From contig NW_026864517.1 in NCBI RefSeq assembly GCF_026571515.1, forward strand, positions 434,001 to 492,411: a DNA stretch of 58,411 nucleotides, in the 5' to 3' direction. Below, in pieces: positions 870 through 58,411 of this stretch (the stretch's first letter is position 1; the number at the start of each line of letters is the position of its first letter). The position numbers were made by a program, and so were the translations under genes. The stretch is from Ruditapes philippinarum (lineage: Eukaryota). The notes under the pieces were generated by a model, which searched no databases, was not told the DNA's origin, and saw nothing but the letters and a program-made list of their open reading frames with translations.

Positions 870-1016
870 TAGATAGATTTTCCAAGATTGTTCAGTGAAT
901 CCGTATGTAGAGGGCTTAATTTCCGATAGTGCCACTGATTCACTATCTTCATCGGTAACGGTAATTTCTATCACTATATCTTCAACAGCAATTTGAACGT
1001 TTTCACCTGCCTCCAT
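870..1016 (-). pseudogene. BTB-MATH copy 1: 5' fragment only, truncated before the BTB domain
   Basis: ATG at 1016 reads MEAGENVQIAVEDIVIEITVTDEDSESVALSEIKPSTYGFTEQSWK, homologous to the other copies' N-termini. Homology stops at ~870. The upstream conserved motif is present at 1071-1105. Confidence 0.85.
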
Positions 1017-1529
1017 ATTTAGTGTAATATTTTTTTTTACAGTTAAACGATCCGCGATTTGTATTTTGTCACAGTGGCGGTAACAAATCAAAGGGAGAAA
1101 ACTGGGGGAAAAATCCCGGTATCTGGGACGCGAAGTAAAGACTATTGTATTGATTTTTTGTCGCAAATCCTCTTAAACACCAAAGATTAACGATGCAACA
1201 AAATATAAAATAATTGTCATATGATATCGCTTATCAATATCGCGTGCAAAAATAGAATAGAATTGAATTGAATTGAATCGTGTGCAGTAACTAGATTGTT
1301 TTGACTGTAATTGCTGGATTACTATATAGATCTAGTACATTAATAGGATATCGAATACGTGAATGTTTATTATAAACTTTTTTGTTTTGTTTTTTAATTA
1401 GTTGAACAAAATTACATTATACAAGTTCTGGGAGTTTGTTAACGCGCCTATTATAAGGAATATTAGCGCGTGTTTACGTTTCATATTTTCTGGGTTTTTT
1501 TTTTGCTAACCAGTGAGATTTTCTTTGTG

Positions 1530-1775
1530 GTTGCTGGATTTATAACGTGGCATCAACACAATTTGTATAAGTGACTTTCAAGCTTAAATGGTGGATGAAT
1601 GATTCAGGTGCCCTTGAACTGTGTATATTCGATTGTTTCAGACACGAACCGGCGCCTTCGTGTGTAGAACTACCAACGTTCTGTAAGCTATAGATGGTAG
1701 CTTCCACACATGAAAGAATCAAAAACCCCTATCGGGATCCGAACCAAATTCGGGCCAAGTGGTTTGAAGTGGTTT
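1530..1775 (-). mobile_element. tRNA-derived SINE (family 1), degenerate
   Basis: Minus-strand B-box GGTTCGGATCCC at ~1734-1745. Body (GACTTTC..AGCTT..CAGGTGCCC..GTAGAACTACCAACGTTC.GTAAGCTA) is shared with five other copies in the window. Confidence 0.65.
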
Positions 1776-2377
1776 AAATAGTCGCATCGCTTCGCTTTAC
1801 GTCGCAGCGGTCTGATATTACCGTTTACCCTAGAAATTTACTTCACGCTATCAAAGACAAAAATCTCCAAGCACTGTAGCTGCAAAACTTAATAATAATA
1901 ATTATTACATCTATATATCCTTACACATTACATTACTTAACGAATCTAAGCCATTCTTCCTTCAACACCTTAGAAGATGAATTATAGTATTTGATACTTG
2001 TTTTCATATCCAATTCCAAAATGTATAAGAAATATATTGTGTTCGTTCTTAAAAATAATATTATTTTCATAATATGTTACTATATGTATAACAAACTCAA
2101 TACTATTTGTAATGTACTACCATGTATTATTTTGTGAATAAAATATTGTTTAAACTAACAACTCCAAACATTAAATGCCTATTTGTTTACATGTTTAGTT
2201 TCTTAATTAGCGTAGGTTAGACTGAAATACCGTATCCGTTCTGTATATTCTTACTATTGTGTTCCATGTCCTTATCCGAAGACTGACGGAAAGGGCCGAA
2301 AAATTGCGATTGCGTTATCATCATATCAGTCATCATCAACAACAATATCATAACCATAATTACACTTTTTTGTGAAT

Positions 2378-2520
2378 GGGTTCTACGTCGCACTAACACA
2401 GTATAGGTCATATGACGACTTTCCAGCTTTACTGATGGAGGAAGACCTCAGGTGCCCGTTCGTGCTGAAGGGCACCCGAGTAGAACCACCGACGTTCCGT
2501 AAGCTAGCTGGATAGATTTC
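2378..2520 (-). mobile_element. SINE family 1 remnant lacking the tRNA head; paralogues at ~11808-11970, 22966-23080, 43995-44160, 48644-48800
   Basis: Shared core GGGTTTTACGTCGCACCAACACAGTA..GGCGACTTTCCAGCTTTA..GAGGAAGA..TCAGGTG..GAGTAGAACCACCAACGTTCCGTAAGCTAGCTGG. Always embedded in the CAT-rich region, so it was amplified with the cassette. Confidence 0.65.
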
Positions 2521-2820
2521 TAATAACTACAACGCCGTCATCAAAATCATCATCATCATACGCAGTACACATCATCATCATTTTCATTACATCGTCGTGT
2601 TCAACAGCAATGCATCTACACCATCTTTATCATCGTCAATATATTCATCAATACTGACAATACATTATCATCATCATCATTATTATCACAAGCACATCAT
2701 CATCAGCAGTATATCATCCGCATCATCATCATCAGACAATCATCGCAATTATCATCATCATTGGTACCATCATTGTTGTAATCATCATTAAATTATCAAC
2801 AACAACATTTTATCATTACC
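2520..2820. repeat. Degenerate (CAT)n/(CAA)n low-complexity tract; paralogues at ~11980-12270, 22840-23380, 43790-44340, 48470-49290
   Basis: Visible CATCATCAT runs, which give rise to the His/Ser/Ile-rich spurious ORFs. Confidence 0.9.
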
Positions 2821-3313: not shown

Positions 3314-3318
3314 ACACT

Positions 3319-3351
<33 letters not shown>

Positions 3352-3910: not shown

Positions 3911-5047
3911 CTATTTGTTAGGCTTCGACATGAACACCTGTGCGATAACACCGATCTTTCCGTTGAAAATGTAACCTTTGCCAACTTGCTCAATACTATG
4001 TGTTCCTAAAATTTCAAATAATGCATGTTGCAAAAATGAATTAAAACTTCCGCTTTGAACAACCACATTATTTTTTCCACGTGGTTGTCTATTTACTTGT
4101 ATGCAGAGCACATTTATATCACAGATGATTGTATTTTCACTGATGTTTTCAACTTTTATGTAAAGCCTACCGACGTTATTTTCTATACTTATCTTCAGAG
4201 GAACCTCCCAAATATTAGTATAAACTCCTTTACTTTCTTTCGTTCCTTCAGGAATAACATCAATAATAACTATGGTCTTGTCATCCCATTTCTGTGCAGG
4301 ATCTAACTTCAAATCCTTCTTTCCGTTACGTATTTCGGATGATATGTACTGCTTAAACAATGCATTTTCTTCGGCAACCTCTTCTAGCTCAACTAACTTT
4401 TTTCTTCATTTGATGTTATTAACATTTTTACAAAAAATCTCATTTAATGCACTTGCCGAAGGGAACGACTTACAGTAGTTTTCGTCCAATGCATCACATG
4501 GTCTAGATGATATAAGAAATATGCATCTAGCACGCAAAGCTTTAAGATCATACAAACATGCTTCTTTCAACAACTGTAACAAATCATTCGTCGATGTTTC
4601 TTCTGAGACAGTCTCAAGTATAACTACTTCACATCTTGGTTTTAGCTGTAGGACCTGGTACTCTTCTAACAAAGGAAGAATGACCCTAGCATTGTCGCGA
4701 TTAATTTGGGTGTATGTGTTTGGGTAAATACATCGAAGGAATTCTAAGACGTCCCTTAGTTTCTTCCCAGGCAATTCTAGCTCGTCACTTGACTTTTCCT
4801 TGAAGTCAGATTGGAACATTGCATCAAATACTGGTGACGCAAGTGAAAGAATATTTTTAGCGACGTAAAGCTTTGTTCCTTCAACAACAAGACACAGATC
4901 AGTTCTCCAAGATGGTTCAGTGAAACCGAAAGTAGGCGACTTATCTTCGCCCTGTGCCACTGTTTCACTATCTTCATCGGTAACGATATTTTCAACTACT
5001 GCACCGTCAGATTCGTTTACAATTCTGACGTTTTCACCTGCCTCCAT
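3911..5047 (-). CDS. BTB-MATH copy 2 (frameshifted near 4400-4440; possibly intact in vivo)
   Basis: ORFs 4406-5047 (BTB: TDLCLVVEGTKLYVAKNILSLASPVFDAMF...LEFLRCIYP) and 3911-4360 (MATH-like, ends GYIFNGKIGVIAQVFMSKPNK). The only disruptions are clustered single-base insertions in homopolymers. Confidence 0.8.
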
Positions 5048-5811: not shown

Positions 5812-8800
5812 TTATTTCAAATCTAACAGTCTCCAGTTTTCCCAAATAATCTTCCTTGTCTACAAAATAAACCATGCTGGTGACGGCCTTGTGAATTTTC
5901 GTGTTCTTTGTTCTATAGTAAATCAGTCACATTTGAGGCTTAATTCTGGATTCCACTGTTCTTGATGAATTATTTACTGTCTTCAACTTTAAACATCAGC
6001 ACTATTTAAGTCAAATGAGGCCCAAAATATAATAGGTTAGCCATCTACTTTTTTTCAGAAATCTTCACTCTGTTGTAACACAGTTTAAATTCACCACTTT
6101 GAAAACTCCTGACTGCTGGTGGGTGGTACATCTTTAATCCTTCCGCCAACAAATGAGTTCCTGGAGAATACACAAAAAACAACTTTTAAACACATCATAT
6201 AACACACAAAAACTACACACATGCAATAAATACACTTTAATTATGACCAATCTAACTAGGGATGACTTAAATTGGGCCACTTCAAAATTTTAAAGAACTA
6301 CTTTCTAGACTACAACGGGTTCGGTCTAATTCCGTACCGGGTTGAGACCTAAATGAATCCAAAATTTAAGTTAAGCCAAAATTTATACTCATTTCCTAGT
6401 AATTTAGTGTTATACAAGTACATTCATATAGGTTTGACATGTCTCTAACAAATTACATTAATGCAGTACAATTTCTTAAATATAAAAATTCATGCGAAAA
6501 ATCAGCCTCGGCCAATAGAATTTTACACAAAAATTTATATCACAAATTCTGTCATATCTCTTGCCAATGGATTTTCTTCAAATAAAATTTGTTGTTACCG
6601 GCTAATGTCATTTAGTTATTTTTATGAAAGAATAAGTCCTTATTGCTTTAAAATTGTAATATTAACTCCATTTAATTTAATGAGAGCATGAAATGTTTGG
6701 TTAAAATACAAGTAATCACAATTAAATGTGCTTTTTCATAACTTTTTCCTTCAACATTACAATAAAACTTACTGATTATGATTTTTACCTATATACCATG
6801 GTAAATAAAGTACAGTACCAAGATATATACCCTATATTGTTTGCTTTAGATATTAGTAAAGACAAACAGAGGTAATCTTAAGTTTAGCAAAGAGGTTACT
6901 ATATCGCCATGGGCTATGTCTTCTGACAAAGTAAGATTAGCCAACTCTCACACAAATAAGGCTAAAAAATGATGGCACATACTGTCTCCCACTTTAAATC
7001 ATTGAGAAGTGTTAAAGTAGTCAAAATTAGAGAAATCTTTTCCTGATATACATCAAAATATCTACCAAATATTGCCCGAGCATTGGGAGTCGTTGCCGTC
7101 AATAGCCTGAAGTTTCAAACTAGACATAAGTTAATTACCTTCTCAACTTGTCCTGACAAATCTGTTGCCAAACTGAGCTGAAAGAGTTCTTCCATAGATC
7201 TTAACCAGTATAAGGTAAGGTCCTGTACTCAAAACCCGGCTTTGGTAACTGCATGGTCTGAAAAAATATGCAACACTAGTACATGTTGAAGGAAATTATA
7301 AGAGGCATTTATGCTGTTATTCTGATATCCAAAAAAAGAAAGAAAATAATTTCTTAATTAATCAATGGCTTGATTTGCAAATTCACACAGGAAGGCTTAA
7401 ATATTGTGTGCTTAAAAATGCATGCATGCATGGAAATAACAGTTTAGACATTATAAACCTAACCTAATTTAACTGCTGTAGCAGCTGCTACAACAACAAA
7501 CAACAAACAATCAACATCAACTGTGTTATTTCTAAATGAGCCAATTATCCATAAACTCACTGTTTTATGACTAGAAAATCTTTTGTGTGTATGTATTAGC
7601 AAATACATTCTGCAGCACAGCAAAACATCAAGTTTCACTACACTGAAAATGCCTATATTTCCAACATGTAAATCACATTTGTCCTAGCTGTTCAATTGTC
7701 AGTTCTGCTTTCATTGAAATACAAGACAATAGTGAATATTTACAAATCTGATTACTACAGCATCAATACTTTGCTGAAACATCAGTGCATATAATGCGTG
7801 GTCCATATGAGCAATAGGTTACTATGGTGCTTGTTCGAATACCATGGCCGGTGCTTCTTGGGCCCCTAAGACCTCTAAAATGAGCTTGCCAATCACTTTT
7901 TTTGCCAAACAGTAACCAGCCTGAAAACATGCACTCCCCAATTTCTTGCAATGCATGGTTTATCCATGATTTAAGATGCATTTCTCTAAAAATTATCATT
8001 TTCCATATGAATGTTATAAAAATAAGCAATAGATCTAGTAAACTGCTAAATACAGGGTGCAAAAATAAAATTTATCAATTTATTAACTGCTTTAAACAAA
8101 ATTTAAATTTCATTATTTTTATTTTAAATGTATTTTTACAGTTTTAATTCAATAAAATGTGGACAATCGTTCACGCAAAAGGTCTGTACCCTTCTTCTGC
8201 ACCTACTGACACAGTAGCAGACATCTACATTTAAAGGGGAGATAACAATAACAACATCTGTCCCAATTTAAAATGTCAAAATTAAAAATTTGAAATAAAA
8301 TTTAAAATTTTCAAACCTGTCAGTTTTCCTTTATTTTCCTGATTTCTATGCATAAACACAACACTGATGCAAAGTTTCATCCATATCCATTAACCAGTTC
8401 CCATTTTTCAAATTTCTCCTCTTGGTGACGGCCTGGTGAATTTTCGTGTTCTTTGTTCTATAGTAAATCAGTCACATTTGAGGCTTAATTCTGGATTCCA
8501 CTGTTCTTGATGAATTATATACTGTCTTCAACTTTAAACATCAGCACTATTTAAGTCAAATGATGCCCAAAATATAATAGGTTAGCCATCTACTTTTTTC
8601 AGAAAACTTCCACTCTGTTGTAACACAGTTTAAATTCACCACTTTGAAAACTCCTGACTGCTGGTGGGTGGGTACATCTTTAATCCTTCCGCCAACAAAT
8701 GAGTTCCTGGAGAATACACAAAAAACACATCATATAACACACAAAAACTACACACATGCAATAAATACACTTTAATTATGACCAATCTAACTAGGGATGA

Positions 8801-10795
8801 CTTAAATTTGGCCACTTCAAAATGTTAAAGAACTACTTTCTAGACTACAACGGGTTGGGTCTAATTCCGTACCGGGTTGAGACCTGCTGTGTATCTCGAG
8901 CTGAATATTTTTGAAATATTTCACCATTCCAGTTTCTAGTAGATTTTCTAGAACATCAAAGTCGCAGCCTTCACAGTCCATAGAAAGTAGATCTACACTG
9001 TATATATCCTACGCCAAGATTTTGGAAAAAAATTCTGTTTGAATTCAATGAACACTTACATTTATTTTCTTCTGACCAAAATCATTCGAATAAAATTTCC
9101 GAACCTTTCCCCTTTGAAAAATTCAATAGCAATAGTTTCCGTCTTCTGTCGAGTCCGAAATTTAAGAACGGACCTGGATATTAAAACTAAGAATTTTTAT
9201 GCAGAACATAAGAATTTTACTTTGCTTTTCTTAGTGTTTCCTCTTAAAATTGCATTGATGTATATTGGAAAAACAAATTTTAAGTTTAATTTTATCCATG
9301 AGTTTTAAATTAGATGCGTTGACATAAAAAAAACATATTTGATAATGAGATATTCTTAAAAACTAAAAAAGTTATGGATATTCGTAATTTTTACGTAAAT
9401 TTAGTATATAAATTATTGTCCGTAAAATCAGAAGAAAATTGTCTTGTTAATCACAAGTGCTTAATAAATAAAAGTAAAAAAAACGGAAAAAAATTTTACA
9501 AAATTTATTTCCCTTTTTTGTAAATTTTAAATAAGAAAGGGGAAGAACCCTTTTCAACAAAAAATGGAAATAAAGGGAAAGCGACATAATTTTAAAATAA
9601 ATATCAATTTCCCAAATAAAAAATAGAAGGGGCTTTTTAAAAAGATTGGTTTGAAAAGAAATTGGGATTTTATTTAAAAATTTACGTCTCGGCTAGGTCA
9701 CGTGATTCGGTTCTCTACCTACCGAGATATGGTGTAGAGTACCATACAGAAGCTCTCAATTAAATTTTAAGATAATTTATTGATTATCCCAAAGAGTTAT
9801 AGTTCACTTATCCTTAGTAGAAAAACTTATCATTAAAAATTAATAACAGTGCTTTACAATAAAATAAGTGTATTTCTCGTTCCCGGTCTGGAGGTAAAAG
9901 TTTAATGTCTAGTTCCGTAAGATTTTAATTTATTCATTCTATTTATGACAAAAAATAAATTTTTATCTTTCGTTTTGTTATTTAGTAATATTTTGATGTT
10001 GAATTTAATGCATCTTTAAATGCAGCCCTTGCACAATATATTTTAAACATTAAATCTTTATATTGCAATGTATACACTGTATTTTATATTACAAAATAAT
10101 ATATCTTACTAATGGGGATTTATATAGGGCATTTCAATATCATTCTATCTTAACGATTGTGGTAAAGGTAACGGAAAGTTAACATACCGCGTCTGCACAA
10201 TATAGGTGACGGAATATAGCATCGACATTTTTTAATTGAATATAAGTAACGGAAAGTGAACATACCGCTTTTTGATAAATAACTGTAATGGAACGTGGCG
10301 TTACCAAATTTTGACAAATATTGGTAACAGAAAGTAATTTTATTAATAAATGCAGGAAATGGCAAGTGATCGATAATTCAAAATTCAAGGGTATATGGCA
10401 TGATGGAGATGTTTACGTGTCAATCAACCGTATTGACTTATTCATTCGCAAAATTTCAAAAAAAAAATCTAAGGCTAAGAATTTCAATTTTTGAACCTCC
10501 CCTTGGAGAGTCACAGTACAAACGCATTCACCAAATTTTTAGTCGCTGGTAAGATATTGTTCATTTCCTACCAACAAACAGTAAACAATTACATTCACAT
10601 AGAAATCTGAAAAAGTATGTTTTATTTAAAACAAGTCAAAAAGTATGAATAAGACCTTGTCTGTAACTATTGCTTCTTTATCAATAAAATAATTGAAAGT
10701 TACTGCTTCTTGGTTAATACTGACACATGTTGCTGATTTTAGGCTGATTTAGCTTAAATATATAAACAAGGAAGCATCTGACCCAAAGTTTCCTG
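5812..10795 (-). pseudogene. FkbM-like methyltransferase copy E: exon 3 split by a 3-kb insertion and partly deleted, exon 2 mostly deleted, exon 1 absent
   Basis: Exon 3 remnants at 5812-5879 (..WENWRLLDLK*) and 8885-9175. Exon 2 remnant at ~10765-10795. Intron 2 is homologous to the other copies. Confidence 0.85.
5880..8884. mobile_element. 3.0-kb element bounded by ~465-bp direct repeats (LTR-like, non-canonical ends), apparently non-autonomous
   Basis: Repeats 5880-6349 and 8425-8884 are nearly identical. Flanked by TGCTG at 5875-5879 and 8885-8889; the paralogous empty site is CATGCTGTG. No long ORF inside. Confidence 0.85.
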
Positions 10796-13274: not shown

Positions 13275-14389
13275 CTATTTATTAGGTTTCGACATAAACA
13301 CCCGTGCAATAATACCAATCGTTTCGTTGAGAATGTAACCATTGCCAACTTGCCAAACACTATTTGTTCCTAAAATTTCAAATAATTTATATTGTGCATA
13401 TGACCGAAAACTTCCGTTTTTAACAATCACATGATTTTTTCCGTTTGGTTGTCTATTCACTAGTATACAGAGCACACTGAAATCACAGATTGTTGTTTTT
13501 TACTCATATTTCCGACTTTAAAGTAAAGATTACTACTCTTATTCATTATATTAATCTTCAGAGGTACCTCCCAAATATTAATATCAACTCCTTCACTTTC
13601 TTTCTTGTCACCAGGAATAACATCAATTATAACTCTTGTCATCCCATTTCTTTTCAGGATCTAACTTCAAATCATTCTTTCCGTTACGTATTTCGGATGA
13701 TATGTACTGCTAAAACAGTATATTTTCTTCAACGACATGTTCTAGCTCTGCTAACTTAGTCTTCATTGATGTATTAACATTTACAAATATCTCATTTAAT
13801 GCACTTGTCGAAGGGAACGATTTACAATAGCTTTAATCCAATGCATCACATGGTCTAGATGATATTAGAAATATACATCTAGCACGCAGAGCTTTAAGAT
13901 CATACAAAGATGCTTCCTTCAACAACTGTAACAAATCATCCGTCGGTGTTTCTTCTGTAACAGTCTCAAGTATTACTACTTCACATCTTGGTTTTAGCTG
14001 TAGGACCTTGTACTCTTCTAAAAAAGGAAGAATGACCCTAGCATAGTCGCGATTAATTTGGGTGTATGTGTTCGGGTAAATACATCGAAGGAATTCTAAG
14101 ACGTCCCTTAATTTCTTCCCAGGCAATTCTATCTCGTCACTTGACTTTTCTTTGAAGTCGGATTCGAACATCGTATCAAATACTGGTGATGCAAGTGAAA
14201 GAATATTTTTAGCGACGTGTTCCTTCAACAATAAGACACAGATCAGTTCTCCATGGGTTCAGTGAAACGGAAAGTACGCGACTTATCTTCGGTTTGCAAC
14301 ACTGTTTCACTATTTTCATCGGTAACGATATTTTCAAATTCTGAACCCTCAGATTCGTTTACAATTCTGACATTTTCATCTGCCGCCAT
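13275..14389 (-). pseudogene. BTB-MATH copy 3
   Basis: ATG at 14389 (MAADENVRIVNESEG..). Small deletions at ~14218 and ~14255, nonsense TAA at 13833-13835, further frameshifts. Ends VFMSKPNK at 13275. Confidence 0.9.
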
Positions 14390-15306: not shown

Positions 15307-15308
<2 letters not shown>

Positions 15309-15564: not shown

Positions 15565-18500
15565 TTATTTCAAATCTAACAGTCTCCAGTTTTCCCACAT
15601 ATGTTTGTATTGATACGTTAATCTATGTGTCCGCCGCATATGTTCCTGGAGTGTACAGTACCGTGTTAAATAATTTTCCTTGTCTATAAAATAAGCCATG
15701 CTGTGTATCTCGAGCTGAATATTTTTGAAATATTTCACCATTCCAGTTTCTAGTAGATTTTCTAAAACATCAAGTTCGCAGCCTTCACAGTCCATAGAAA
15801 GTAGATCTACACTGTATATTCCTACGCCAAGATTTTGGAAAAATTCTGTAGAATTAATGACACTTACATTTATTTTCTTCTGACCAAAATCATTCGAGTA
15901 AATGTTCGAACCTTCGCCTTTGAATTCAATAGCAATAGTTTCCGTCTTCTGGCCGAGTCCGAAATTTAGAACAGTGACCCTGCAGATATAAAATAAGAAT
16001 TTTTATGCATATATTTATGTGTTGACATAAGAAAAAAAAACATGTTTGAGGAAATGATATCCTTAAATGCTAGAAAGTTTGACATAATATGTAATCTTTT
16101 ACGTAAATATAATATAAAGTTATTGTCAGTAAAATCAGAAGAAAATTTTTCTTGTCAATCACAGTGCTTAATAAATAAAAGTAACGAAAAAACTCACTAG
16201 TGACTGCTTAATATAAGTAACGGAAAGTGAAGTTACCACTTTTCGACAAATATGAATAAGGTAAGGCGACATATTCACTTCCTCATAAATAAAGTAACAT
16301 TTCAACTTCTAAATAAATATAGAATGGGTCTTTTAAAAAGATTGGTCTAGAAACGGGATGTGTTCATGAAAAAGACGTCTCGGCTAGGTCACGTGATTCG
16401 GTTCTCTATCTACCGAGATATGGTGTAGAGTACCATACAGAATCTCTCAATCAAATTTTCTCGTTCCCGATCTGGAGATAAAAGTTTACTTCACACGTTT
16501 GTAAAAAGGTCGAGTTTCGTAAGCTTTTAATTTATTCATTGTTTTTATTTTTATGACAAAAAAATGAAATAAATGTCACATGTAAAGATTTTTATCTTTC
16601 GTTTTGTTATTTAAAATATTTGATGTTGAATTTAATGCATCTTAAAATGCAGTCCTTGCGCAATCGGCCGTTCTCAGTTAGAATTTACACCCTTAGTTTT
16701 TACTTGTCGCCACCGTCTATCCTCATTATTGCAGGTTATTTGCCTGTAAATCTATGCTGGTTTAAGAAGGTAAATGTTACCTTAAATAACACACAATAAC
16801 TCGCCATTTGATCATGAATAATTGTTTAATAATATTCACCTAAAGTTACGAAAATGACAGGTTCGTGATTGTCGCCGTCCAATTTATAAAAAGTGAACCT
16901 GTATTTAGATGCTTTAATTGTATTGTTTTAATTTTGTTTCATGCCGTATTATTTTGGAACACTTTACGACTATAAATTTGTAAATTAGATCTCAGTAACA
17001 ATAACTCATAAAAAATGGTAAGGGGTTAGTGTTTGTCGCCGGATAGTATGAAATGTTCGTTATCCTTTTAACCATATATTGCAAGTGAAGTGTTTTTATC
17101 ATTGAAACAACATTACATGTTCTTTTTTGTATTAATATCACAATATAATACTTTCATATTATCACCATGTTCATAGTGTGCACATTTTTTTTATTATAAT
17201 TTATGCAGAATTTAACGTTGTGATGTGGTTTTGGTTAAAATTGAAAGGTTCGTTATCTGATTTTAAGGGTTCATCACTGCAATATGTACTCCCAGCACAT
17301 GAAATGTTCTAAGTTGCGTAAAAATTAGTATATTATGCCAAAAATGAAACATTTTGTAGCTGTATAAACAATATTATTGAATCTGAAATATGCTGAGAAA
17401 AGGTTCGTGATGAAAGGTTCGTGCGGTTATATATTTTACTCGCTGCCGCATTCACTATGCTTGTTTGTAAACGGCTGCGGTTAACAAACATATGTACTAT
17501 GAAGTCATTTGGGTTGAAACCTTTCAATTCTTTATATTTTAAACATTAAATCTTCTAATTACAATGTATACACATATTACAAAATATATCTTAATAATGA
17601 GATTTATATAGAGCGTTTCAAGGTCATTCTATCTGAAAGATCGTGGTAAAGGTAACGGAAAGTTAACTTACCGCGTCTGCATAATATAAGTAACGGAAAA
17701 TAGCATCGACATTTCTTAATTGAAAAAAGTAACGGAAAGTGAATCTACCGCTTTTTTGATAGATATCTGATTTGGAACGTGGCATTGCCAATTTTTGACA
17801 AATACTGGTAACAGAAAGTGATTTTGTTAATAAATAAATGTAGATGACCGATCATTCAAAATTCATGGGTATATGGCATGATGGAGATGTTTACGTGTCA
17901 ATCAACCGTTTTGACTTTATCGCAAAATTTACAAAAAAAAATCTAAGGCTATGAATTTCAATTTTTGAACCACCTTTTGGAGAGTCACAGTACAAACGCA
18001 ATCACCCAAATTTTGTCGCTGGTAAGATATTGTTAGCTTCCTACCAACATACAGTAAACAATTACATTCACATAAAAAATCTGAAAAAGTCACAAAGGTG
18101 ACCTTATAAGACCTTGTCTATAGATGACTCTTTCTGCTTCTTTATCAATAAAGTAACGGAAAGTTACCTAACCGCTTCTTGGTAAATACTGACAAATGTT
18201 GCTGATTTTATGCTGGTTTAGCTTAGATATGTGACTTAACAGTTTACCTTGGATTGTCTTTGAATTTCTCTTGTAAAAGTGTAGCATAGTACGGTATCGG
18301 CTCCACTATCAGATGTCGTGGGTTGTAGACGGCGGTAAACAAGGAAGCATCTGCTCCAAAGTTTCCTGGTTTTATATAATGGTGAAGTGAATAATTGACA
18401 TATTATAACACCCATTAACAGTTCGTTAACTTTTCATCAGCTGATAACATGGTATTCAGTTTTATTACGATGCATATTATGATTTAGATTTTCTTTTGAA

Positions 18501-19493
18501 TAAACAGTATGCTGTCCATTTTTTCAAACAATAGATCACGCACAGCTATAGAATTCATAATTTTTAAATAGACAGATTATAGAATAACGGTGGTACAAAG
18601 AAATAGTAGGGAAAGTTTATTTGTCACGTGTGCTCTGATAAACTGCCATGAGCCTCACTCAAATTATAACTTGCAGACGTATTAACTGCTAAAGGCACAC
18701 GTGTCAAATATTTCGTGCGGACGTATAACTGGATGTATTTCAATTAATCTATCAGAGTTTGGGCATTATGGATAGGCTAATCCTAACCCCTTGCCTAACA
18801 ATGTGCCGAATAATAGTTTTCGATGCCCCTTCTGTACCACCGAAACAAAAAAACCTAACACAATTATAAATAAATTGTGAAGATAACATATCTTTTGACT
18901 CTTCAATTGCACAAATAATATACATGTTCAGCTAAATAATTATGAAGCTCACACTTTATTCTCATTTTTTGTTCAAACAACATTTCATGAAATTATCCAA
19001 ATGAGAAGTTCTATTGTTTTTATCACTATTTGAAATAATTATGGAAAATGTACCCATTGCCGTAAAGATACAAATCAAAGTACGTTTATGAATGAAATAT
19101 TTTACCTCCAACCTCAATAAGTATCGTGTTATTTTCTTTCAGATAATCATGATGATTGATGCAGACATATTTGTCCTTCACAAAGTTCTCGGCGCCTTTT
19201 AACCAGTCGACATCTGCATATTGCCGGCAGTGAGAAATCCTATTAATTTGATCATAGCTTAAAGAATGGTTGAACAAGGCTTTTCCTCCAACAGCAGGAG
19301 ATGGATGTCCGTCCAGGAAAAGTTGTAAATGTTTATTATAAACCACTTTCTTTTGTTCGCCATCTGTGAAAAATTGTCTAATATCCGACCTGTTTTCTTT
19401 TAAATTATGATTTTGAGTACTGTTAAACAAATAAATTATCAAAACAACTATCACACAAGCTGTCAGTATCCTTGCTACATTTAGCGTTTTCAT
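15565..19493 (-). CDS. FkbM/Methyltransf_21-like SAM-dependent methyltransferase, type II membrane, copy A, intact: join(19106-19493,18248-18365,15565-15979), 306 aa
   Basis: GT-AG introns of phase 1 and 2 join in frame (388+118+415=921 nt). Signal-anchor ILTACVIVVLIIYLF. Motif I ILIEVGG|GNFGAD spans the splice, then LIVEP, VTVLNFGLG, VDLLSMDCEGCELDVL, IQLEIH. Minus-strand AATAAA at 15494-15499. Confidence 0.88.
16665..17533. mobile_element. ~870-bp insertion unique to intron 2 of methyltransferase copy A (unclassified TE fragment)
   Basis: Paralogous introns read ..GC(A/G)CAATATATTTTAAA.. uninterrupted (~10031, ~57041). Here CGGCCGTTCTCAGTTAG... intervenes. Confidence 0.65.
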
Positions 19494-28200: not shown

Positions 28201-28578
28201 AATAAGTTTGTTATGAATGAAGCTAATAAATAGACAATAAAAAATAATTTCAAATCAGTTTACAAAAGACTCACTTTTTAAAACAGTTGCAAAGTGCATC
28301 TTTTAAACTTTATCAGTCCTGATAAAATTTAAAGTTCTAACACGAAGACAAACTTTAATATGATATCGCTTATATGGTTCATTCTGGTGACAAGGGTAAA
28401 GAGAGTAAATAAACAGCATTGTTATTCTGCACTCCCTGGGACTGAATTACAACTAACACGAACACAATAAGCCAAGTGATCCATAGATGTTAAATTAAAC
28501 AATTTACAAAAATACATAAATATCTTCACAATTTTCTACCTTACCAACAATTTCTCCACATAAATACTCTAATTTAAA

Positions 28579-44620: not shown

Positions 44621-45751
44621 CTATTTGTTAGGCTTCGACATGTACACCTGTGCAATAATACCGATCTTTCCGTTGAGAATGTAACCATTGCCAACTTGCT
44701 CAATACTTTCTGTTCCTAAAATTTCAAATGACCGATTTTGTGCATATAACGGAAAACTTCCGTTGTAAACAATCATATGATTTTTTCCACTTGGTTGTCT
44801 GTTTACTAATATGCACAGCACACTTAAACCACAGATGGCTCTATTTTTACTAATGTTTTCGACTTTTAAGTAAAGACTACTATTCTTATTCATAATATTA
44901 ATCTTCAGAGGTACCTCCCAAATATTAATATCAACTCCTTCACTTTCTTCCCTGTCACCAGGAATAACATCAATTATAACTATGGTTTTGTCATCCCATC
45001 TCTTTTCAGGATCTAACTTCAAATCCTTCTTTCTGTTACGTATTTCTGATGATATGTACTGCTTGAATAAAACATTTTCTTCCGCAACCTGTTCTAGCTC
45101 AGCTAACCTTTTCTTCATTGATGTATTAACATTTACAAAAATCTCATTTAACGCATTTGCCGAAGGGAACGACTTACAGTAATTTTCATCCAATGCATCA
45201 CATGGTTTAGATGATATAAGAACTATGCATCTAGCACGCAGAGCTTTAAGATCATACAAACATGCTTCCTTCAATAACTGTAACAATTCATTCGTCGTCG
45301 TTTGTTCAGTGACTGTCTCTAACAGCACTAGTTCACACCTTGGTTTTAGCTGTAGGACCTGGTACTCTTCTAACAAAGGAAGAATGATCCTAGCATTGTC
45401 GCGATTAATTTGGGTGTATGTGTTCGGGTAAATACATCGAAGGAATTCTAAGACGTCCCTTAGTTTCTTCCCAGGCAATTCTAGCTCGTCACTTGACTTT
45501 TCTTTGAAGTCGGATTGGAACATCGTATCAAATACTGGCGAGGCAAGTGAAAGAATCAACTTTGCAACGTAAAGCTTTGTTCCTTCAACAAGAAGACACA
45601 TATCAGTTTTCGAAGATTTTTCAGTGAAACCGAAAGTAAGCAAATTAACTTCGGCTAATGCCATTGTTTCACTTTCTTTGTCGGCAACAATATTTTCAAC
45701 CTCTGCAGCTTCTGATTCGTCTTCAATTCTGACGTTTTCACCTGCCTCCAT
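44621..45751 (-). CDS. BTB/POZ + helical/coiled-coil + MATH(TRAF)-like protein, copy 7, intact 376 aa; putative Cullin-3 substrate adaptor (BATH-like)
   Basis: Uninterrupted ORF. BTB signature DMCLLVEGTKLYVAKLILSLASPVFDTMFQSDFKEK..LPGKK..LEFLRCIYP. MATH-like ending LVNRQ...GNGYILNGKIGIIAQVY. The MATH call is by pattern only. Confidence 0.92.
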   Translation of the reverse strand: MEAGENVRIEDESEAAEVENIVADKESETMALAEVNLLTFGFTEKSSKTDMCLLVEGTKLYVAKLILSLASPVFDTMFQSDFKEKSSDELELPGKKLRDVLEFLRCIYPNTYTQINRDNARIILPLLEEYQVLQLKPRCELVLLETVTEQTTTNELLQLLKEACLYDLKALRARCIVLISSKPCDALDENYCKSFPSANALNEIFVNVNTSMKKRLAELEQVAEENVLFKQYISSEIRNRKKDLKLDPEKRWDDKTIVIIDVIPGDREESEGVDINIWEVPLKINIMNKNSSLYLKVENISKNRAICGLSVLCILVNRQPSGKNHMIVYNGSFPLYAQNRSFEILGTESIEQVGNGYILNGKIGIIAQVYMSKPNK

Positions 45752-45799
45752 GCTAAGTGTAGTTTAGATCAAGTTAATAAATGTATCCACTAGAGTGAA

Positions 45800-45838
45800 C
45801 TAATAGTGGCGGTTACAAATCAAAGGGAGAGAACCGGA
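45800..45838 (-). promoter_or_regulatory. Conserved upstream block CCGGTT(T/C)TCTCCCTTTGATTTGTAACCGCCA(C/T)T..AG, present at all nine BTB copies
   Basis: Also at ~1071-1105, 5103-5143, 14448-14490, 25328-25370, 29823-29866, 36616-36659, 51530-51573 and 55226-55268, while adjacent sequence diverges. Confidence 0.7.
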
Positions 45839-50340: not shown

Positions 50341-51467
50341 CTATTTGTTAGGCTTCGACATGAACACCTGTGCAATAATACCGATCTTTCCGTTGAAAAT
50401 GTAACCATTGCCAACTTGCTGAATAGTATATGTTCCTAAAATTTCAAATGTTTTATATTGTGAATATGACCTAAAACTTTTTTTAACAATCACATGATTT
50501 TGTCCATTTGGTTGTCTATTTACTAGTATGCAGATCACAATTATATCACTCTCGGTCATATTTTTACTAATGTTTTCTACTTTAAAGAAAAGCTTATTTC
50601 CTTCTATCATTATGCTTGTCTTCAGAGGAACCTCCCACATATTAATATCAACTCCTTCACTTTCTTTGTTGTCTTTAGGAATAACATCAATAATAACTAT
50701 GGTCTTGTCATCCCATTTCTTTTCAGGACTTTACTCCAAATCCTTCTATCCGTTACGTATTTCGGATGATATGTACTGCTTAAACAATAGATGTTCTTCA
50801 GCAACATGTTCAAACTCTGCTAACTTTTTCTTCATTGATGTATTAACATGTACAAATATCTCATTTAATGCACTTGCCGAAGGGAAAGACTTACAGTAGC
50901 TTTCGTCTAATGCATCACATGGTCTAGATGATATAAGAAATATGCATCTTTCACGTAAAGCTTTAAGATCATACAAACATGCTTCCTTCAACAACTGTAA
51001 CACCTCATCCGTCGACGTTTCTTCTGTGACAGTCTCAAGTATAACTTCTTCACATCTTGGTTTTAGCTGTAGGACCTGGTACCCTTCTAACAAAGGAAGA
51101 ATGACCCTAGCGTTGTCGCGATCAATTTGGGTGTATGTGTTCGGGTAAATACATCGAAGGAATTCTAAGACGTCCCTTAGTTTCTTCCCTGGCAATTCTA
51201 GCTCGTCACTTGACTTTTCCTTGAAGTCGGATTGGAACATTGCATCAAATACTGGCGAGCCAGTGAAAGAATCACCTTTGCGACGTACAGCTTTGTTCCT
51301 TCCACAACAAGACAAAGATCAGTTCTCCAGGTTTTTTCAGTGAAACCGAAAGTAGGCGAATTAACCTCGGCTAAAGCCACACTTACACTATCTTCATCGG
51401 TAACGATATTTTCATCTTGTGCATCTTCTGATTTGTCTGCAATTCTGACGTTTTCAACTGCCTCCAT
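50341..51467 (-). pseudogene. BTB-MATH copy 8
   Basis: 1-nt deletion at ~51260. In-frame TAG at 50746-50748 and TAA at 50731-50733. Confidence 0.9.
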
Positions 51468-54166: not shown

Positions 54167-55193
54167 CTATCTGTACCATTTGTTAGGCTTCGACATGGAA
54201 AACTGTGCAATAATGCCAACCTTTCTGTTGAGAATGTAACCACTGCTAACGTTATCAATATTAGAATTGAAAAAAATATCAAATGTTGCAGTTTGACTAT
54301 TTTCAGTTAATCTGACTTCGTGGAAAGTCGTGCGATTTTGTCCATTTGGTTGCCTATTGACGAGTATGCAGAGAACCCGTATATCACAAACAGTTTTATA
54401 TTCACCAATGTTTGTAACATCACAGTATAGCATACTGCTTGTTTTCATTGTGCTTATTTTAAGAGGGACTCCCCACAACCCATTTTCAACTCCTTCACTT
54501 TCTTTCTTGTCGGTACCAATTACATCAATTAGAACAATGATCTTTTCATCCCATTTCTTCTCTGGATCTAACTTCAATTTTTTTCCCAACCGTAATTCTG
54601 ACAATACGTACTGCTTAAATACTACATTTTCTTCTGAAACCTGATCTAGCTCTGCTAACTTTCTTTTCCTTGATGTATTTATATTTACATCTAGCACGCA
54701 GAGCTTTAAGATCATACAAACATGCTTCCTTAAACAACTGTAAAAAATCATCCGTCGATGTTTCTTCTGTGACAGTCTCAATTATAACTACTTCACATCT
54801 TGGTTTTAGCTGTAGGACCTTGTACTCTTCTAAAAAAGGAAGAATTGCCCTAGCGTTGACGCGATCAATTTGGGTGTATTTGTTCGGGTAAATGCATCGA
54901 AGGAATTCTAAGACGTCCTTTAGTTTCTTCCCTGGCAATTCTAGCTCGTCACTTGACTTTTCCTTAAAGTCAGATTGGAACATTGCATCAAATACTGGTG
55001 ACGCAAGTGAAAGAATATTTTTAGCGACATACAGCTTTGTTCCAAAGATCAGTTCTCCAAGATGGTTCAGTGAAACCGAAAGTAGGCGACTTATCTTCGG
55101 CCAGTGCCATTGTGCAACTATATTCATTGGTAACGATAATTTCAACTACTGTATCCTCATATTCGCAATTGTGACGTTTTCATCTGCCTCCAT
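54167..55193 (-). pseudogene. BTB-MATH copy 9 (class II C-terminus)
   Basis: ATG at 55193. Short deletion at ~55045 in the first BTB strand. A ~90-bp deletion at ~54685 removes FLISSRPC...NEIF. Ends MSKPNKWYR. Confidence 0.88.
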
Positions 55194-55470
55194 ATTAAAT
55201 GTAGTTCACTTAAAGTTCTTATTCAATCAGCTGACAATGGCGGTTATAAATCAAAGGGAGAAAACCGGATATTAGGTATTAAACACAATTACATAAAATG
55301 GCGGTTAAATTTGATTAATCATATTATTTGTCCTGTTATAAAGATTTTTTTTCTGGATTTTGAACACAGGTTTTGATTATGATAATATTTCGGCGGTTTT
55401 TCCACCAATTTCTCCGCAAGTGATTCTCTACGATATAGGGATATAGCATATTTCGGCCTAAAAGCCAGAC

Positions 55471-55505
<35 letters not shown>

Positions 55506-55760
55506 AACAATAACAAATGGTAATTCATTGTGATTACAACCAAACTTTGAACAGTCCTACAAATGAGTTAGGTCTGAGAATGATCGAGTTTTAATTTTGT
55601 TCTCTGAAAAAGTTTCAAATAATAGCCGTTCCATTTCAGCCAGTGTCAATCTAGGCGAAGAACAAATACAATAAAGAAGGTCTTTTATTAACTTCTTTAG
55701 TTTTTATAAAATTTATTCTAATCTGATTTTACAAATTCTTATCTCAAATTTCTATTTTTT

Positions 55761-57913
55761 TTATTTCAAATCTAACAGTCTCCAGTTTTCCCACATGTGT
55801 TTGTATTGATACGTTAATCTATGTGTCCGCCGCATATGTTCCTGGAGTGTACAATACCGTGTTAAATAATCTTCCTTGTCTATAAAATAAGCCATGCTGT
55901 GCATCTCGAGCTGAATATTTTTGAAATATTTCACCATTCCAGTTTCTAGTAGATTTTCTAGAACATCAAGTTCGCAGCCTTCACAGTCCATAGAAAGTAG
56001 ATCTACACTGTATATTCCTACGCCAAGATTTTGGAAAAATTCTGTAGAATTAATGACACTTACATTTATTTTCTTCTGACCAAAATCATTCGAATAAATG
56101 TTCGAACCTTCGCCTTTCAATTCAATAGCAATAGTTTCCGTCTTCTGTCCAAGTCCGAAATTTAGAACAGTGACCCTGCAGATATAAAATAAAAAAATAT
56201 GCAGACATAAGATATATACATTTGCTTTTCTTAGTGTTTCCTCTTAATTCATTGAAAATTTATTGAAAACAAATTTTAAGTTTAATTCTTCAATGAATTA
56301 AATTAGATGTGTTGACATAAAAAAAATATATTTAGGTAATGATATTCTTAAATGCTAGAAAGTTTGGCATAATTTGTAATCTTTTACGTAAATATAATAT
56401 AAAGTCATTGTCAGTAAAATCAGAAGAAGAATTTTCTTGTCAATCACAGTGCTTAATAAATAAAAGTAACGAAAAAAACTCACTAGTGACTGCTTAATAT
56501 AAGTAACGAAAGTGAAGTTACCACTTTTCGACAAATATGAATATGGTAAAACGACATATTCACTTCCTCATAAATAAAGTAACATTTCAACTTCGAAATA
56601 TAAAATATAGGAAGGGTCTTTTAAAAAGATTGGTCTGGAAACGAGATGTATTCATGAAAAAAAGATGTCTCGGCTAGGTCACGTGATTCGGTTCTCTACC
56701 GTAGAGTTCCATACAGAAACTCTCAATCAAATTTTAAGATACTTTGTTGATTATTCAAAAGAGTTATTGATAACTTATTCTTAGTAACTTAACTTATCAT
56801 TAATAAATAATTACAATGATTTACAATGAAATAAGTGCTTTTTCTCGTTCCTGGTCTGGAGATAAAAGTTTACTTCACACGTTTGGAAAAAGATCGAATT
56901 TCGTAAGTATTTCATTTATTCATTGGTTTTAATGACAAAAAATAAAATAAATGTCTCATGTAAAAATTTGTTTTTATCTTTCGTTCTGTTATTTAGAAAT
57001 AATTGATGTTGAATTTAATGCATCTTAAAATGCAGCCATTGCGCAATATATTTTAAAATTTAATCTTCATATTGCAATGTTAACACTGTATTTTATACTA
57101 CAAAATATATTTTACTAATGGGGATTTATATAAGAGGTTTCAAGATCATTCTATCTGAAAGATTGTGGTAAAGGTAACGGAAAGTTAACTTACCGCGTCT
57201 GCATAATAAGAAATGGAAAATTGAAATTGAATATCAGTAACGGAAAGTGAACCTACCGCTTTTGATAAATAACTGTAATGGAACGTGGCTCTGCCAATTT
57301 TTGAAAAATATTGGTAACAGAAAGAGATTTTGTTAATAAATGTAGGTAATGGCAATTGACCGATCATTCAAAGTTCAAGGGTGTATGGCATGATGGAGAT
57401 GTTTACGTGTCAACCGTTTTGACTTTTTCGAAAAATTTACAAAAAGATTCTAAACTATGGATTTCAATTTTTGAACCTCCTTTTGGAGAGTCACAGTACA
57501 AACGCAATCACCAAAATTTTAGTCGCTGGTAAGATATTAGTCATTTCATACCAACAAGCAGTAAACAATTACATTCACATAGACATCTGAAAAAGTCTGT
57601 TTTATTAAAACAATTCACAAAGGTATGAATAAGACATTGATTGTAAATCACTCTTGCTGCTTCTTTGTCAATAAAGTAACGAAAAGTTACCTTACCGCTT
57701 CTTGGTAAATACTGACAGCTGTTGCTGATTTTATGCTGGTTTAGCTTAGCTGATTTTATGCTGGTTTAGCTTAGATATGTGACTTAACAGTTTACCTTGG
57801 ATTGTCTTTGAATTTCTCTTGTAAAAGTGTAGCATAGTACGGTATCGGCTCCACTATCAGATGTCGTGGGTTGTAGACGGCGGTAAACATGGAAGCATCT
57901 GACCCAAAGTTTC
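55761..57913 (-). CDS. FkbM-like methyltransferase copy D, exons 2 (57796-57913) and 3 (55761-56175); exon 1 expected beyond the window end
   Basis: Both exons are open, have the same lengths as copy A (118 and 415 nt) and keep their splice sites. Confidence 0.85.
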
Positions 57914-58411
57914 CTGGTTTTTATAATGGTGAAGTGAATAATTGACATATTATAACACCCATCAACAGTTCGTATACTTTTCAATAGCAAACAACATAGT
58001 ATTCACTTTTATTAGAATGAATTTTATGATTTAGATCTTCTTTTGAATAAAGAGTATGCTGTTCATTTTTTCAAACAAATGATCACGCACTGCTATAGAA
58101 TTCATTATTTTTAAATAGAAAGAATTAAGAATAACTTTGGTACAGAGAAATACTAGGAAAAGTGCATTCCTGTTAATGACAATGAGCCTCACTCAAACTC
58201 TAACGTGCAGACGTATTAATTAACTGCCAAGTGCGCACGTGTCGATTATTTCGTCCGCACTGCATATATAAATTAATCTATAAGAGTTAGGGTTTATGGA
58301 GAGGCTAAATCTTAAACATTGCTTTTTATATGTTCCAATACGGAATGTTTTTCGTATTCCCCTCTTCACCGAACAAAAAAACAAACTTACAAACAATAAA
58401 AATTTAAAAAT

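What the first reader, a model, noticed from the sequence alone, without database searches (positions are those of the whole stretch)
870..58411. Co-amplified two-gene cassette: membrane-anchored FkbM-like methyltransferase followed by hypervariable BTB-MATH adaptors
Seen: in transcription order the array is MT-D>BTB9>BTB8>BTB7>MT-B>BTB6>[MT-C>BTB5]>BTB4>MT-A>BTB3>MT-E>BTB2>BTB1, all on one strand. Every MT stop codon lies ~0.6-1.2 kb upstream of a BTB ATG. Known: BTB-MATH proteins are Cullin-3 adaptors, and nematode MATH-BTB families show birth-death evolution proposed to reflect pathogen defence. Inference: this may be an undescribed invertebrate immune or self-recognition locus pairing a surface-glycan modifier with variable ubiquitin-ligase adaptors. 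Passive hitchhiking during tandem duplication is the null model.
Basis: partly seen in the sequence, partly recalled or inferred. Interest (0 to 1): 0.8.

Follow-up and report, generated by a model that had tools for sequence, protein, structure and literature searches.

The report
Clam BTB-MATH array with embedded methyltransferase
This end of a Manila clam contig holds a real, decaying tandem array of fast-evolving BTB-MATH ubiquitin-ligase adaptor genes with a membrane FkbM methyltransferase gene copied along inside it, but the two genes look joined by duplication history, not by a shared function.

Summary
The layout is real. Every copy lies on the minus strand of a Ruditapes philippinarum contig end, and each methyltransferase (MT) stop sits 0.57-1.18 kb upstream of a BTB start.

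The count is inflated:
- The bracketed unit [MT-C>BTB5] is a 6.8-kb near-identical copy that differs by 14 substitutions and 111 small indels. It is probably an unpolished assembly duplicate.
- Only 1 of 9 BTB copies has an open frame (44621-45751).
- Only MT-A is a demonstrably intact 3-exon gene.

The domain order, BTB-coil-MATH, is the reverse of SPOP.

The BTB core is conserved (dN/dS 0.19) and MATH is variable (0.71). MT copies are under purifying selection (0.1-0.3).

The functional pairing is not supported:
- All MT>BTB adjacencies trace to one ancestral junction.
- Seven other MT loci in this genome have no BTB-MATH neighbour, and other BTB-carrying contigs have no MT hit.
- MT-adjacent BTB copies are mostly broken.
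- Each BTB carries its own conserved upstream block.
- RNA shows no read-through.

Passive co-duplication is the best reading. Synteny in other species could not be tested. The scan had already noted the MT gene and the MATH variability on this window.

The parts
44621..45751 (-). The only intact ORF, 376 aa: disordered acidic N-terminus, BTB plus 3-box helices (about 44-200), long helix (198-243), MATH-fold sandwich (251-376).
   Evidence: ORF list. Pfam BTB E 7.6e-17. AF2 mean pLDDT 79, about 90 in the C-terminal domain. VIA-align Z 14.4 to the USP7 TRAF domain and Z 13.9 to the SPOP BTB.
54178..55193 (-). BTB-MATH pseudogene (BTB9), directly downstream of MT-D. It has deletions of 4, 14 and 92 nt.
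50341..51467 (-). BTB-MATH pseudogene (BTB8). It has a 1-nt deletion at nt 206 and two in-frame stops (TAG, TAA). No MT lies upstream.
35446..36570 (-). BTB-MATH copy (BTB6), downstream of MT-B. The frame is broken only by an A6/A7 homopolymer difference near 35716. It may be intact in reality.
28629..29774 (-). BTB5, a noisy near-identical copy of BTB6 (1 substitution and 22 indels). Probably an assembly artefact.
24153..25268 (-). BTB-MATH copy (BTB4). The frame is kept, with one TGA at codon 94 and a 15-nt deletion. No MT lies upstream.
13275..14389 (-). BTB-MATH pseudogene (BTB3), downstream of MT-A. It has six frame-breaking indels and two in-frame stops.
3911..5047 (-). BTB-MATH copy (BTB2), downstream of the MT-E remnant. 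It has one TGA in a rearranged 30-nt patch. It is 97-98% identical to the intact gene on C15762 (P0002). RefSeq models it as a 230-aa truncated product (P0009).
878..1016 (-). N-terminal remnant of a BTB gene (BTB1), about 48 codons.
15565..19493 (-). MT-A, an intact 3-exon FkbM-family methyltransferase gene of 305 aa. Exons are 19493-19106, 18365-18248 and 15979-15568, with GT-AG introns. It has an N-terminal hydrophobic anchor and the motif EVGGNFGADAS across the exon 1/2 junction.
   Evidence: PF05050. TIGR01444 at 41 bits against a cut-off of 37.7.
37388..40628 (-). MT-B, a full-length copy. Exons 2 and 3 are open. Exon 1 has three 1-nt homopolymer gaps relative to its near-twin on C15762, which may be assembly errors.
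55761..57913 (-). MT-D. Exons 2 (57796-57913) and 3 (55764-56175) are open. Exon 1 lies beyond the contig end.
30610..32783 (-). MT-C, exons 2 and 3 only. It is a noisy copy of MT-B inside the near-identical 6.8-kb duplicate.
8885..10792 (-). MT-E fragment: the start of exon 2, an intron, and the first 281 nt of exon 3, with many 1-nt insertions. It is cut at 8885 by an insertion.
5878..8885 (.). A 3-kb insertion bounded by about 470-bp direct repeats (5878-6350 and 8423-8885, 95.6% identical) that splits MT-E. It looks like an LTR-type element and has no coding hit.
26098..39669 (.). Two tandem 6.8-kb copies (26098-32915 and 32916-39669) that differ by 14 substitutions and 111 small indels.
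45796..45837 (-). A conserved block of about 42 bp, 45-86 bp upstream of the ATG. It is present before every full-length BTB copy whether or not an MT lies upstream. Probably the BTB genes' own core promoter or 5'UTR.

Best explanation
This is the distal 58 kb of a birth-and-death tandem array in the Manila clam.

The array's main family encodes single-exon proteins of about 376 aa. Each has a SPOP-type BTB domain with 3-box helices, a long helix, and a C-terminal MATH/TRAF-fold domain. By inference these are CUL3 substrate adaptors. The BTB scaffold is conserved and the MATH substrate-binding domain diverges fast.

A 3-exon gene for a type II membrane FkbM-family methyltransferase came to lie just upstream of one BTB copy. 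Unequal crossing-over then copied the MT>BTB junction along with the rest, first as a unit of about 9-10 kb and then as a higher-order repeat of about 20 kb. Later exchange between copies left a mosaic pattern.

The linkage of the two genes is physical and historical. The two proteins would work in different compartments: the MT in the secretory lumen, the adaptor in the cytosol or nucleus.

Shown: gene identities, the MATH fold, the copy map, the selection regimes, the single origin of the junction, and its absence elsewhere in this genome.
Inferred: CUL3 binding, MT topology and substrate, and the unequal crossing-over mechanism.
For: - Copy map and strand.
- Homology between units runs through introns and spacers, with offsets of about 9.4 kb and about 20.5 kb.
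- The fold of residues 251-376 matches the USP7 TRAF domain (Z 14.4, rmsd 2.6 A over 126 residues) and SPOP MATH (Z 13). Residues 31-206 match SPOP BTB/3-box (Z 13.9). The Atlas search agrees. The family profile matches SPOP BTB at E 5e-15.
- dN/dS is 0.19 for BTB and 0.71 for MATH. Amino-acid diversity is 0.0-0.15 in the BTB core against 0.3-0.6 in MATH.
- MT dN/dS is 0.06-0.38 in all pairs but one.
- MT dS of 0.07-0.13 against partner BTB dS of 0.27-0.38, together with discordant BTB and MATH dS within pairs, points to mosaic exchange.
- The seven other MT paralogue loci have no BTB-MATH hit within +-10 kb.
- MT and BTB hits share only contigs C13004 and C15762.
- Of the MT-adjacent BTB copies, only C15762_18k, which lies 4.4 kb away, is intact.
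- A conserved block sits 45-86 bp upstream of every BTB ATG, whatever lies further upstream.
- RNA cover is near zero between the MT-A stop and the BTB_14 start, outside a repeat.
- The family has more than 30 further loci in clusters on other contigs, and many members share one Mercenaria chromosome.
Against: - MT copies are kept under purifying selection, so they are not dead passengers.
- They are more alike than their neighbouring BTB genes. This could mean selection for MT dosage, or homogenisation by gene conversion.
- A paper reports an FkbM-domain methyltransferase and a BTB/POZ gene among the Vibrio-responsive genes of this clam (PMC9125321). Which paralogues they are is not known.
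- The RNA test covered one unit, at low depth, with reads that may come from paralogues.
- Patches of the assembly carry indel noise, so some 'broken' copies may be intact.
Confidence: 0.7

Rival explanations
1. The MT and the BTB-MATH adaptors form a functional two-gene immune or self-recognition cassette, co-regulated and selected as a pair.
For: The adjacency recurs five times in the window and twice on C15762. MATH is variable against a conserved BTB. MT copies are under purifying selection. FkbM-domain and BTB/POZ genes are listed as Vibrio-responsive in this species (PMC9125321).
Against: All the junctions are copies of one junction. There is no adjacency at seven other MT loci, and the other BTB-carrying contigs have no MT hit. 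MT-adjacent BTB copies are mostly broken, and the only intact BTB in the window has no MT upstream. The divergence of the partners is discordant. The BTB genes have their own upstream block. No read-through was seen. The predicted compartments differ.
Confidence: 0.07
2. Amplification driven by the MT. Extra copies of the methyltransferase are the selected product, for dosage, and the downstream BTB copies are the hitchhikers that decay.
For: MT copies have low dN/dS and low dS between copies. The BTB copies directly downstream of them are broken. An FkbM-domain gene is induced by Vibrio (PMC9125321).
Against: BTB-MATH arrays without an MT exist elsewhere in the genome and next to this window, so BTB duplication does not need the MT. 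The BTB cores of even the broken copies still show dN/dS of about 0.2, so their decay is recent. Two MT copies are fragments.
Confidence: 0.18
3. Much of the apparent array is an assembly artefact, from haplotigs placed in tandem or unpolished duplicates.
For: The 6.8-kb pair differs by 14 substitutions and 111 indels. Homopolymer-type breaks occur in BTB_36 and in MT-B exon 1. Contig C15762 carries 97-99% identical versions of two BTB copies in a different order. The window is a contig end.
Against: The other copies are only 77-89% identical, with large deletions and substitution-type stop codons. That is paralogue-level divergence, not allelic difference or sequencing error.
Confidence: 0.05

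Closest known systems
MATH-BTB CUL3 substrate adaptors (SPOP; C. elegans BATH family; plant BPM)
   Same: The BTB is SPOP-type with 3-box helices (profile E 5e-15, Z 13.9), and there is a MATH-fold domain (Z 13-14). Like the nematode family, this one is a lineage-specific tandem expansion with a conserved BTB and a fast-evolving MATH. The adaptive-evolution proposal for the nematode family is Thomas 2006, Genome Res, cited from memory.
   Different: The domain order is reversed, BTB then MATH, with a 46-residue helix between them. The MATH domain is not detected by the Pfam MATH models. Full-length matches by sequence were seen only in the venerid clams Ruditapes and Mercenaria, plus unnamed transcript or metagenome contigs.
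BTBD17 / Tango10 (BTB-BACK-TRAF-like, Pfam PF23651)
   Same: The same order of a BTB scaffold followed by a C-terminal TRAF/MATH-like sandwich. The Atlas structure match has TM 0.70 over residues 247-374.
   Different: No sequence-profile match to PF23651 at E <= 0.1. The clam proteins are shorter, lack a full BACK domain, and have a coiled helix instead.
FkbM-family SAM-dependent methyltransferases (PF05050 / TIGR01444; related PF13383)
   Same: Exon 3 passes both family thresholds. A glycine-rich SAM motif lies across exons 1 and 2.
   Different: This is an animal, intron-containing gene with an N-terminal membrane anchor. The substrate is unknown. A glycan O-methyltransferase role is an inference from topology, not tested.
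Tandem arrays in which an unrelated gene is carried along in the repeat unit (segmental tandem duplication by unequal crossing-over)
   Same: Homology is continuous across genes, introns and spacers. There is a higher-order periodicity of about 20 kb. The array holds a mix of intact, truncated and decayed copies.
   Different: Here the passenger MT copies remain under purifying selection and are more alike than the host-family copies.

Membership tests
MATH-BTB (SPOP/BATH/BPM-type) CUL3 adaptors | BTB/POZ domain detectable by sequence profile | tested here: met
   PF00651 E 7.6e-17, residues 44-144. The family profile matches SPOP BTB at E 5e-15.
MATH-BTB (SPOP/BATH/BPM-type) CUL3 adaptors | MATH domain detectable by sequence profile (PF00917 / PF22486) | tested here: not met
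   No MATH family at E <= 0.1 in Pfam. There is only a sub-threshold match of the profile to the USP7 TRAF domain, E 0.4.
MATH-BTB (SPOP/BATH/BPM-type) CUL3 adaptors | MATH/TRAF-C eight-stranded beta-sandwich fold | tested here: met
   AF2 pLDDT is about 90 over residues 250-376. Z 14.4, rmsd 2.6 A over 126 aligned residues to USP7, and Z 13 to SPOP MATH. Atlas TM 0.70-0.75 to MATH_2 clusters.
MATH-BTB (SPOP/BATH/BPM-type) CUL3 adaptors | MATH domain N-terminal to BTB | tested here: not met
   BTB is at residues 44-200 and MATH at 251-376.
MATH-BTB (SPOP/BATH/BPM-type) CUL3 adaptors | Binds CUL3 through BTB/3-box and substrates through the MATH groove | not testable with these tools
   Only a structural overlay with SPOP BTB plus 3-box, model residues 31-206 on SPOP 180-354.
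FkbM-family methyltransferase | Passes the curated family thresholds | tested here: met
   PF05050 at 31.9 bits against 22.7. TIGR01444 at 41 bits against 37.7. Both were scored on exon 3 alone. The joined spliced protein was not searched.
FkbM-family methyltransferase | SAM-binding glycine-rich motif present and frame intact | tested here: met
   EVGGNFGADAS across the exon 1/2 junction of MT-A. The 918-nt CDS is open, with GT-AG introns. This was read from the sequence, not scored by a profile.
FkbM-family methyltransferase | Methyltransferase activity and substrate (glycan?) | not testable with these tools
   None.
BTBD17/Tango10 (BTB-BACK-TRAF) | Sequence match to PF23651 TRAF_BTBD17 and a full BACK domain | tested here: not met
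   Neither is listed by Pfam at E <= 0.1. There is structural similarity only.
Functionally coupled two-gene cassette | Adjacency recurs at independent loci of the same genome | tested here: not met
   The seven other MT loci have no BTB-MATH within +-10 kb. MT and BTB hits share only C13004 and C15762.
Functionally coupled two-gene cassette | Adjacency conserved in related species | not testable with these tools
Functionally coupled two-gene cassette | Shared or read-through transcript, or co-expression | tested here: inconclusive
   No joints and near-zero cover between MT-A and BTB_14. But depth was low, only one unit was tested, and reads may come from paralogues.

The most novel reading that the evidence does not exclude
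The MT>BTB-MATH junction is kept because the two genes act in one infection response. An inducible lumenal methyltransferase changes a glycan or protein mark, while diversified cytosolic BTB-MATH adaptors target pathogen or host factors, and both are switched on from one chromatin domain. Copy number of the unit would then be under selection and would vary between clams.
Probability: 0.07. Interest if true: 0.7.

Novelty: new variant of a known kind. Interest (0 to 1): 0.3.

Why it matters
The clam family adds a third animal or plant lineage in which BTB-plus-MATH ubiquitin-ligase adaptors have expanded in tandem with a fast-changing substrate-binding domain. Here the domain order is reversed, and the MATH domain is invisible to Pfam, so current annotation calls these proteins 'uncharacterized' or names them only through their BTB half.

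For bivalve immunity research they are candidate variable intracellular adaptors. The embedded methyltransferase is a candidate secretory-pathway methyltransferase with several conserved copies.

The proposed two-gene immune cassette would be notable, but it is not supported. The case also warns that local indel noise in this assembly can both create and destroy apparent gene copies.

Tried and rejected
Cross-species synteny was therefore not tested.
- The word search with MT exon 3 gave only five short proteins and none from Mercenaria. The length filter excludes the full 305-aa protein.
- The joined, spliced MT protein was not sent to any search or fold tool.
- The Rfam scan of the window found nothing.
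- The other ORFs of 90 aa or more on either strand have no Pfam family. The plus-strand ORFs over BTB genes are antisense shadows.
- The RNA and DNA read laying gave low depth, no splice joints for MT-A, and reads with paralogue-type differences. It neither confirms the MT-A introns nor settles which frameshifts are real.
- Literature searches found no description of this clam family or of an animal FkbM glycan methyltransferase. They found only the Vibrio transcriptome paper.
- I considered that the whole array is an assembly artefact and rejected it, because of the 77-89% identity between copies.
- I considered calling every broken copy a pseudogene and rejected that for BTB_36 and MT-B, whose breaks are homopolymer-length differences.
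- A site-model test for positive selection was not run.


Full report
**Source and layout**

Protein matches identify the window as Ruditapes philippinarum. It is the last 58.4 kb of a 492-kb contig, C13004:434001-492411. GC content is about 32%.

With the one intact 376-aa ORF (44621-45751, minus strand) as query, tblastn finds nine BTB-family copies, all on the minus strand. Their starts are at 55193, 51467, 45751, 36570, 29774, 25268, 14389, 5047 and 1016. With the methyltransferase (MT) exon ORFs as queries it finds five MT copies, also on the minus strand. The distances from MT stop to BTB ATG are 567, 817, 835 and 1175 bp, and about 0.77 kb for the MT-E remnant. The observed layout is therefore real.

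**State of the copies**

I aligned each BTB copy to the intact one.

|---|---|---|
| 55193 | BTB9 | deletions of 4, 14 and 92 nt |
| 51467 | BTB8 | 1-nt deletion and two in-frame stops |
| 45751 | BTB7 | intact, 376 aa |
| 36570 | BTB6 | one 1-nt gap |
| 29774 | BTB5 | 28 frame-breaking indels |
| 25268 | BTB4 | one TGA at codon 94 |
| 14389 | BTB3 | six frame-breaking indels and two in-frame stops |
| 5047 | BTB2 | one stop in a rearranged patch |
| 1016 | BTB1 | 140-bp remnant |

The whole-genome search gives the same stop counts.

- MT-A is a clean 3-exon gene with exons at 19493-19106, 18365-18248 and 15979-15568. It has GT-AG introns and an open 918-nt reading frame encoding 305 aa.
- MT-D has open exons 2 and 3, and its exon 1 lies beyond the contig end.
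- MT-B is complete but has three 1-nt gaps in exon 1.
- MT-C lacks exon 1.
- MT-E is a fragment cut at 8885 by a 3-kb insertion bounded by 470-bp direct repeats.

**Assembly noise**

The segments 26098-32915 and 32916-39669 align with 6706 matches, 14 mismatches and 111 indels, most of 1 nt. BTB_29 differs from BTB_36 by one substitution and 22 indels. That ratio is typical of unpolished long-read sequence and not of mutation. The bracketed [MT-C>BTB5] unit is therefore most likely a false or unpolished duplicate of MT-B>BTB6.

The single break in BTB_36 is an A6/A7 run. The three gaps in MT-B exon 1 are all in short homopolymers that are complete in the near-identical copy on contig C15762. 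Those two genes may be intact in the animal.

The decay of BTB_55, BTB_51, BTB_14 and BTB_25 rests on large deletions or substitution-type stop codons, so it is real.

**What the BTB protein is**

Pfam finds only BTB, at residues 44-144. I aligned 24 family members. In that alignment the invariant columns sit almost entirely in residues 42-175, and the C-terminal third is beta-rich and variable.

AlphaFold2 on this alignment gives mean pLDDT 79, and about 90 over residues 250-376. The model shows a BTB fold, helices, a 46-residue helix (198-243) and an eight-stranded sandwich.

- VIA-align places residues 251-376 on the USP7 TRAF domain (Z 14.4, rmsd 2.6 A, 126 of 137 residues) and on the SPOP MATH domain (Z 13).
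- It places residues 31-206 on SPOP BTB plus 3-box (Z 13.9). Foldseek agrees.
- The family profile matches SPOP BTB at E 5e-15. It matches the USP7 TRAF domain only weakly, at E 0.4.
- The ESM Atlas search of residues 245-376 returns MATH and TRAF-C clusters by features (0.91) and by structure (TM 0.70-0.75). Among them is the BTBD17/Tango10 cluster, which has the same BTB-then-TRAF order.

The order is the reverse of SPOP, BATH and BPM, and the domain escapes Pfam.

**What the MT is**

Exon 3 passes PF05050 and TIGR01444. The first 25 residues hold a hydrophobic stretch (ILTACVIVVLIIYLF) after K2 and R8, which reads as a type II signal anchor. The motif EVGGNFGADAS spans the exon 1/2 junction. 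A lumenal glycan substrate is an inference. I did not search the joined spliced protein. The exons were searched apart.

**Selection**

Nei-Gojobori estimates were made over 11 copies: the window's copies plus C15762, C407 and the copy 16 kb upstream.

| Region | dN/dS |
|---|---|
| BTB and helices, codons 44-200 | 0.19 (0 of 55 pairs above 1) |
| Coil | 0.42 |
| MATH domain | 0.71 |

Amino-acid diversity is 0.00-0.15 in the BTB core and 0.3-0.6 in MATH, with conserved islands at 311-320 and 371-376. This supports 'variable adaptors', but it does not separate positive selection from relaxed constraint. The BTB cores of the broken copies still show low dN/dS, which means those copies broke recently or are not truly broken.

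MT copies have dN/dS of 0.06-0.38 in all pairs but one (0.61, based on 10 differences). They are therefore not evolving neutrally.

**Is the pairing functional?**

1. Self-alignment shows homology running through MT introns, the MT-BTB spacer and the BTB genes, with offsets of about 9.4 kb and about 20.5 kb. All the junctions descend from one junction, so the five or seven adjacencies count as one observation.
2. The MT exon-3 query finds seven other paralogue loci in this genome, at 45-62% identity. I fetched +-10 kb around each. A tblastn with 24 family proteins finds no BTB-MATH there.
3. The BTB query finds more than 30 further loci in clusters on other contigs. None of those contigs has an MT hit. 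The older BTB copies 11-16 kb left of the window have no MT either.
4. The BTB copies directly downstream of an MT (55193, 36570, 14389, 5047 and C15762_10k) are all broken in the assembly. The only intact BTB in the window has no MT upstream.
5. In matched units the MT dS is 0.07-0.13 while the partner BTB dS is 0.27-0.38. Within BTB genes the BTB and MATH parts give discordant dS. The units are mosaics and are not faithfully co-inherited cassettes.
6. Every full-length BTB copy has the same conserved block of about 42 bp, 45-86 bp before its ATG, whatever lies further upstream. This suggests that each BTB gene has its own promoter.
7. I laid RNA reads on 13500-19499. In one run they give about 18x on MT exon 3 and about 10x on the BTB gene, and almost nothing in the spacer apart from a highly repeated element at 14537-14713. 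There are no MT-BTB joints. Depth was low, and many reads carry paralogue-type differences, so this is weak evidence.

**Points in favour of something more**

- The MT copies are conserved and unusually alike.
- A transcriptome study of this clam lists 'methyltransferase FkbM domain' and a BTB/POZ gene among Vibrio-responsive genes (PMC9125321). The paralogues are not identified, and the authors treat the MT as a DNA methyltransferase.

**Other contigs**

C15762 carries MT>BTB(intact, P0002)>MT>BTB(broken). Its BTB copies are 97-98% and 99% identical to the window's BTB_05 and BTB_36, but they sit in a different order. It is either a structurally different haplotype or a further stretch of the array.

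**Verdict**

This is a real tandem array of a venerid-clam BTB-coil-MATH family, with an FkbM methyltransferase gene carried inside the repeat unit. The gene identities and the variability of MATH are supported. The copy count is inflated by an assembly duplicate, and most BTB copies are broken. The proposed functional pairing is not supported by any test that could be run.

Noticed in passing
window 14537-14713: A short element of about 177 bp in the MT-A to BTB_14 spacer has enormous depth in all four runs, DNA and RNA (word depth above 200,000). It is a very abundant, transcribed repeat, possibly a SINE. It explains why this spacer is longer than the others. It has no Rfam match.
   Followed up: partly
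window 45796-45837 and the same place before each BTB copy: A block of about 42 bp (core CCGGTTTTCTCCCTTTGATTT.TAACCGCCA) lies 45-86 bp upstream of the ATG and is nearly invariant among copies that are otherwise about 80% identical. It is a candidate promoter element. I did not test that.
   Followed up: partly
window 5878-6350 and 8423-8885: Direct repeats of about 470 bp, 95.6% identical, flank about 2 kb of non-coding DNA inserted into exon 3 of the MT-E remnant. It looks like a small non-autonomous LTR-type element.
   Followed up: no
window 10894-11710: Arrays of a 22-bp unit in both orientations form long inverted repeats at the upstream truncation point of MT-E. The 133-aa plus-strand ORF at 10968-11369 is only a translation of this satellite.
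   Followed up: no
window 21577-21879 and 41869-42202; C15762 27-39 kb: A 39-bp tandem repeat recurs at the same place in each 20-kb higher-order unit. On C15762 the surrounding segment is itself repeated at least three times, about 3.5 kb apart.
   Followed up: no
window 15803 (MT-A exon 3): 5 of 22 RNA reads of run X21 carry a GATC duplication here, which would shift the frame. This points to an expressed MT allele or paralogue with a frameshift. A 4-nt insertion of the same letters also breaks the BTB copy on C15762 relative to BTB_36.
   Followed up: no
window 8885-9175 and 26098-32915: These patches have many 1-nt insertions relative to all paralogues, the pattern of unpolished long-read consensus. 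Gene models in such patches of this assembly should not be trusted for frame.
   Followed up: partly
L007 (C407:1-10000): Another short contig carries an intact BTB-MATH gene (P0004, 371 aa) and a broken one. No MT hit was found in the 20 kb examined, and its downstream DNA is 90% identical to window 1292-3322. It is probably a further haplotype or array segment.
   Followed up: partly
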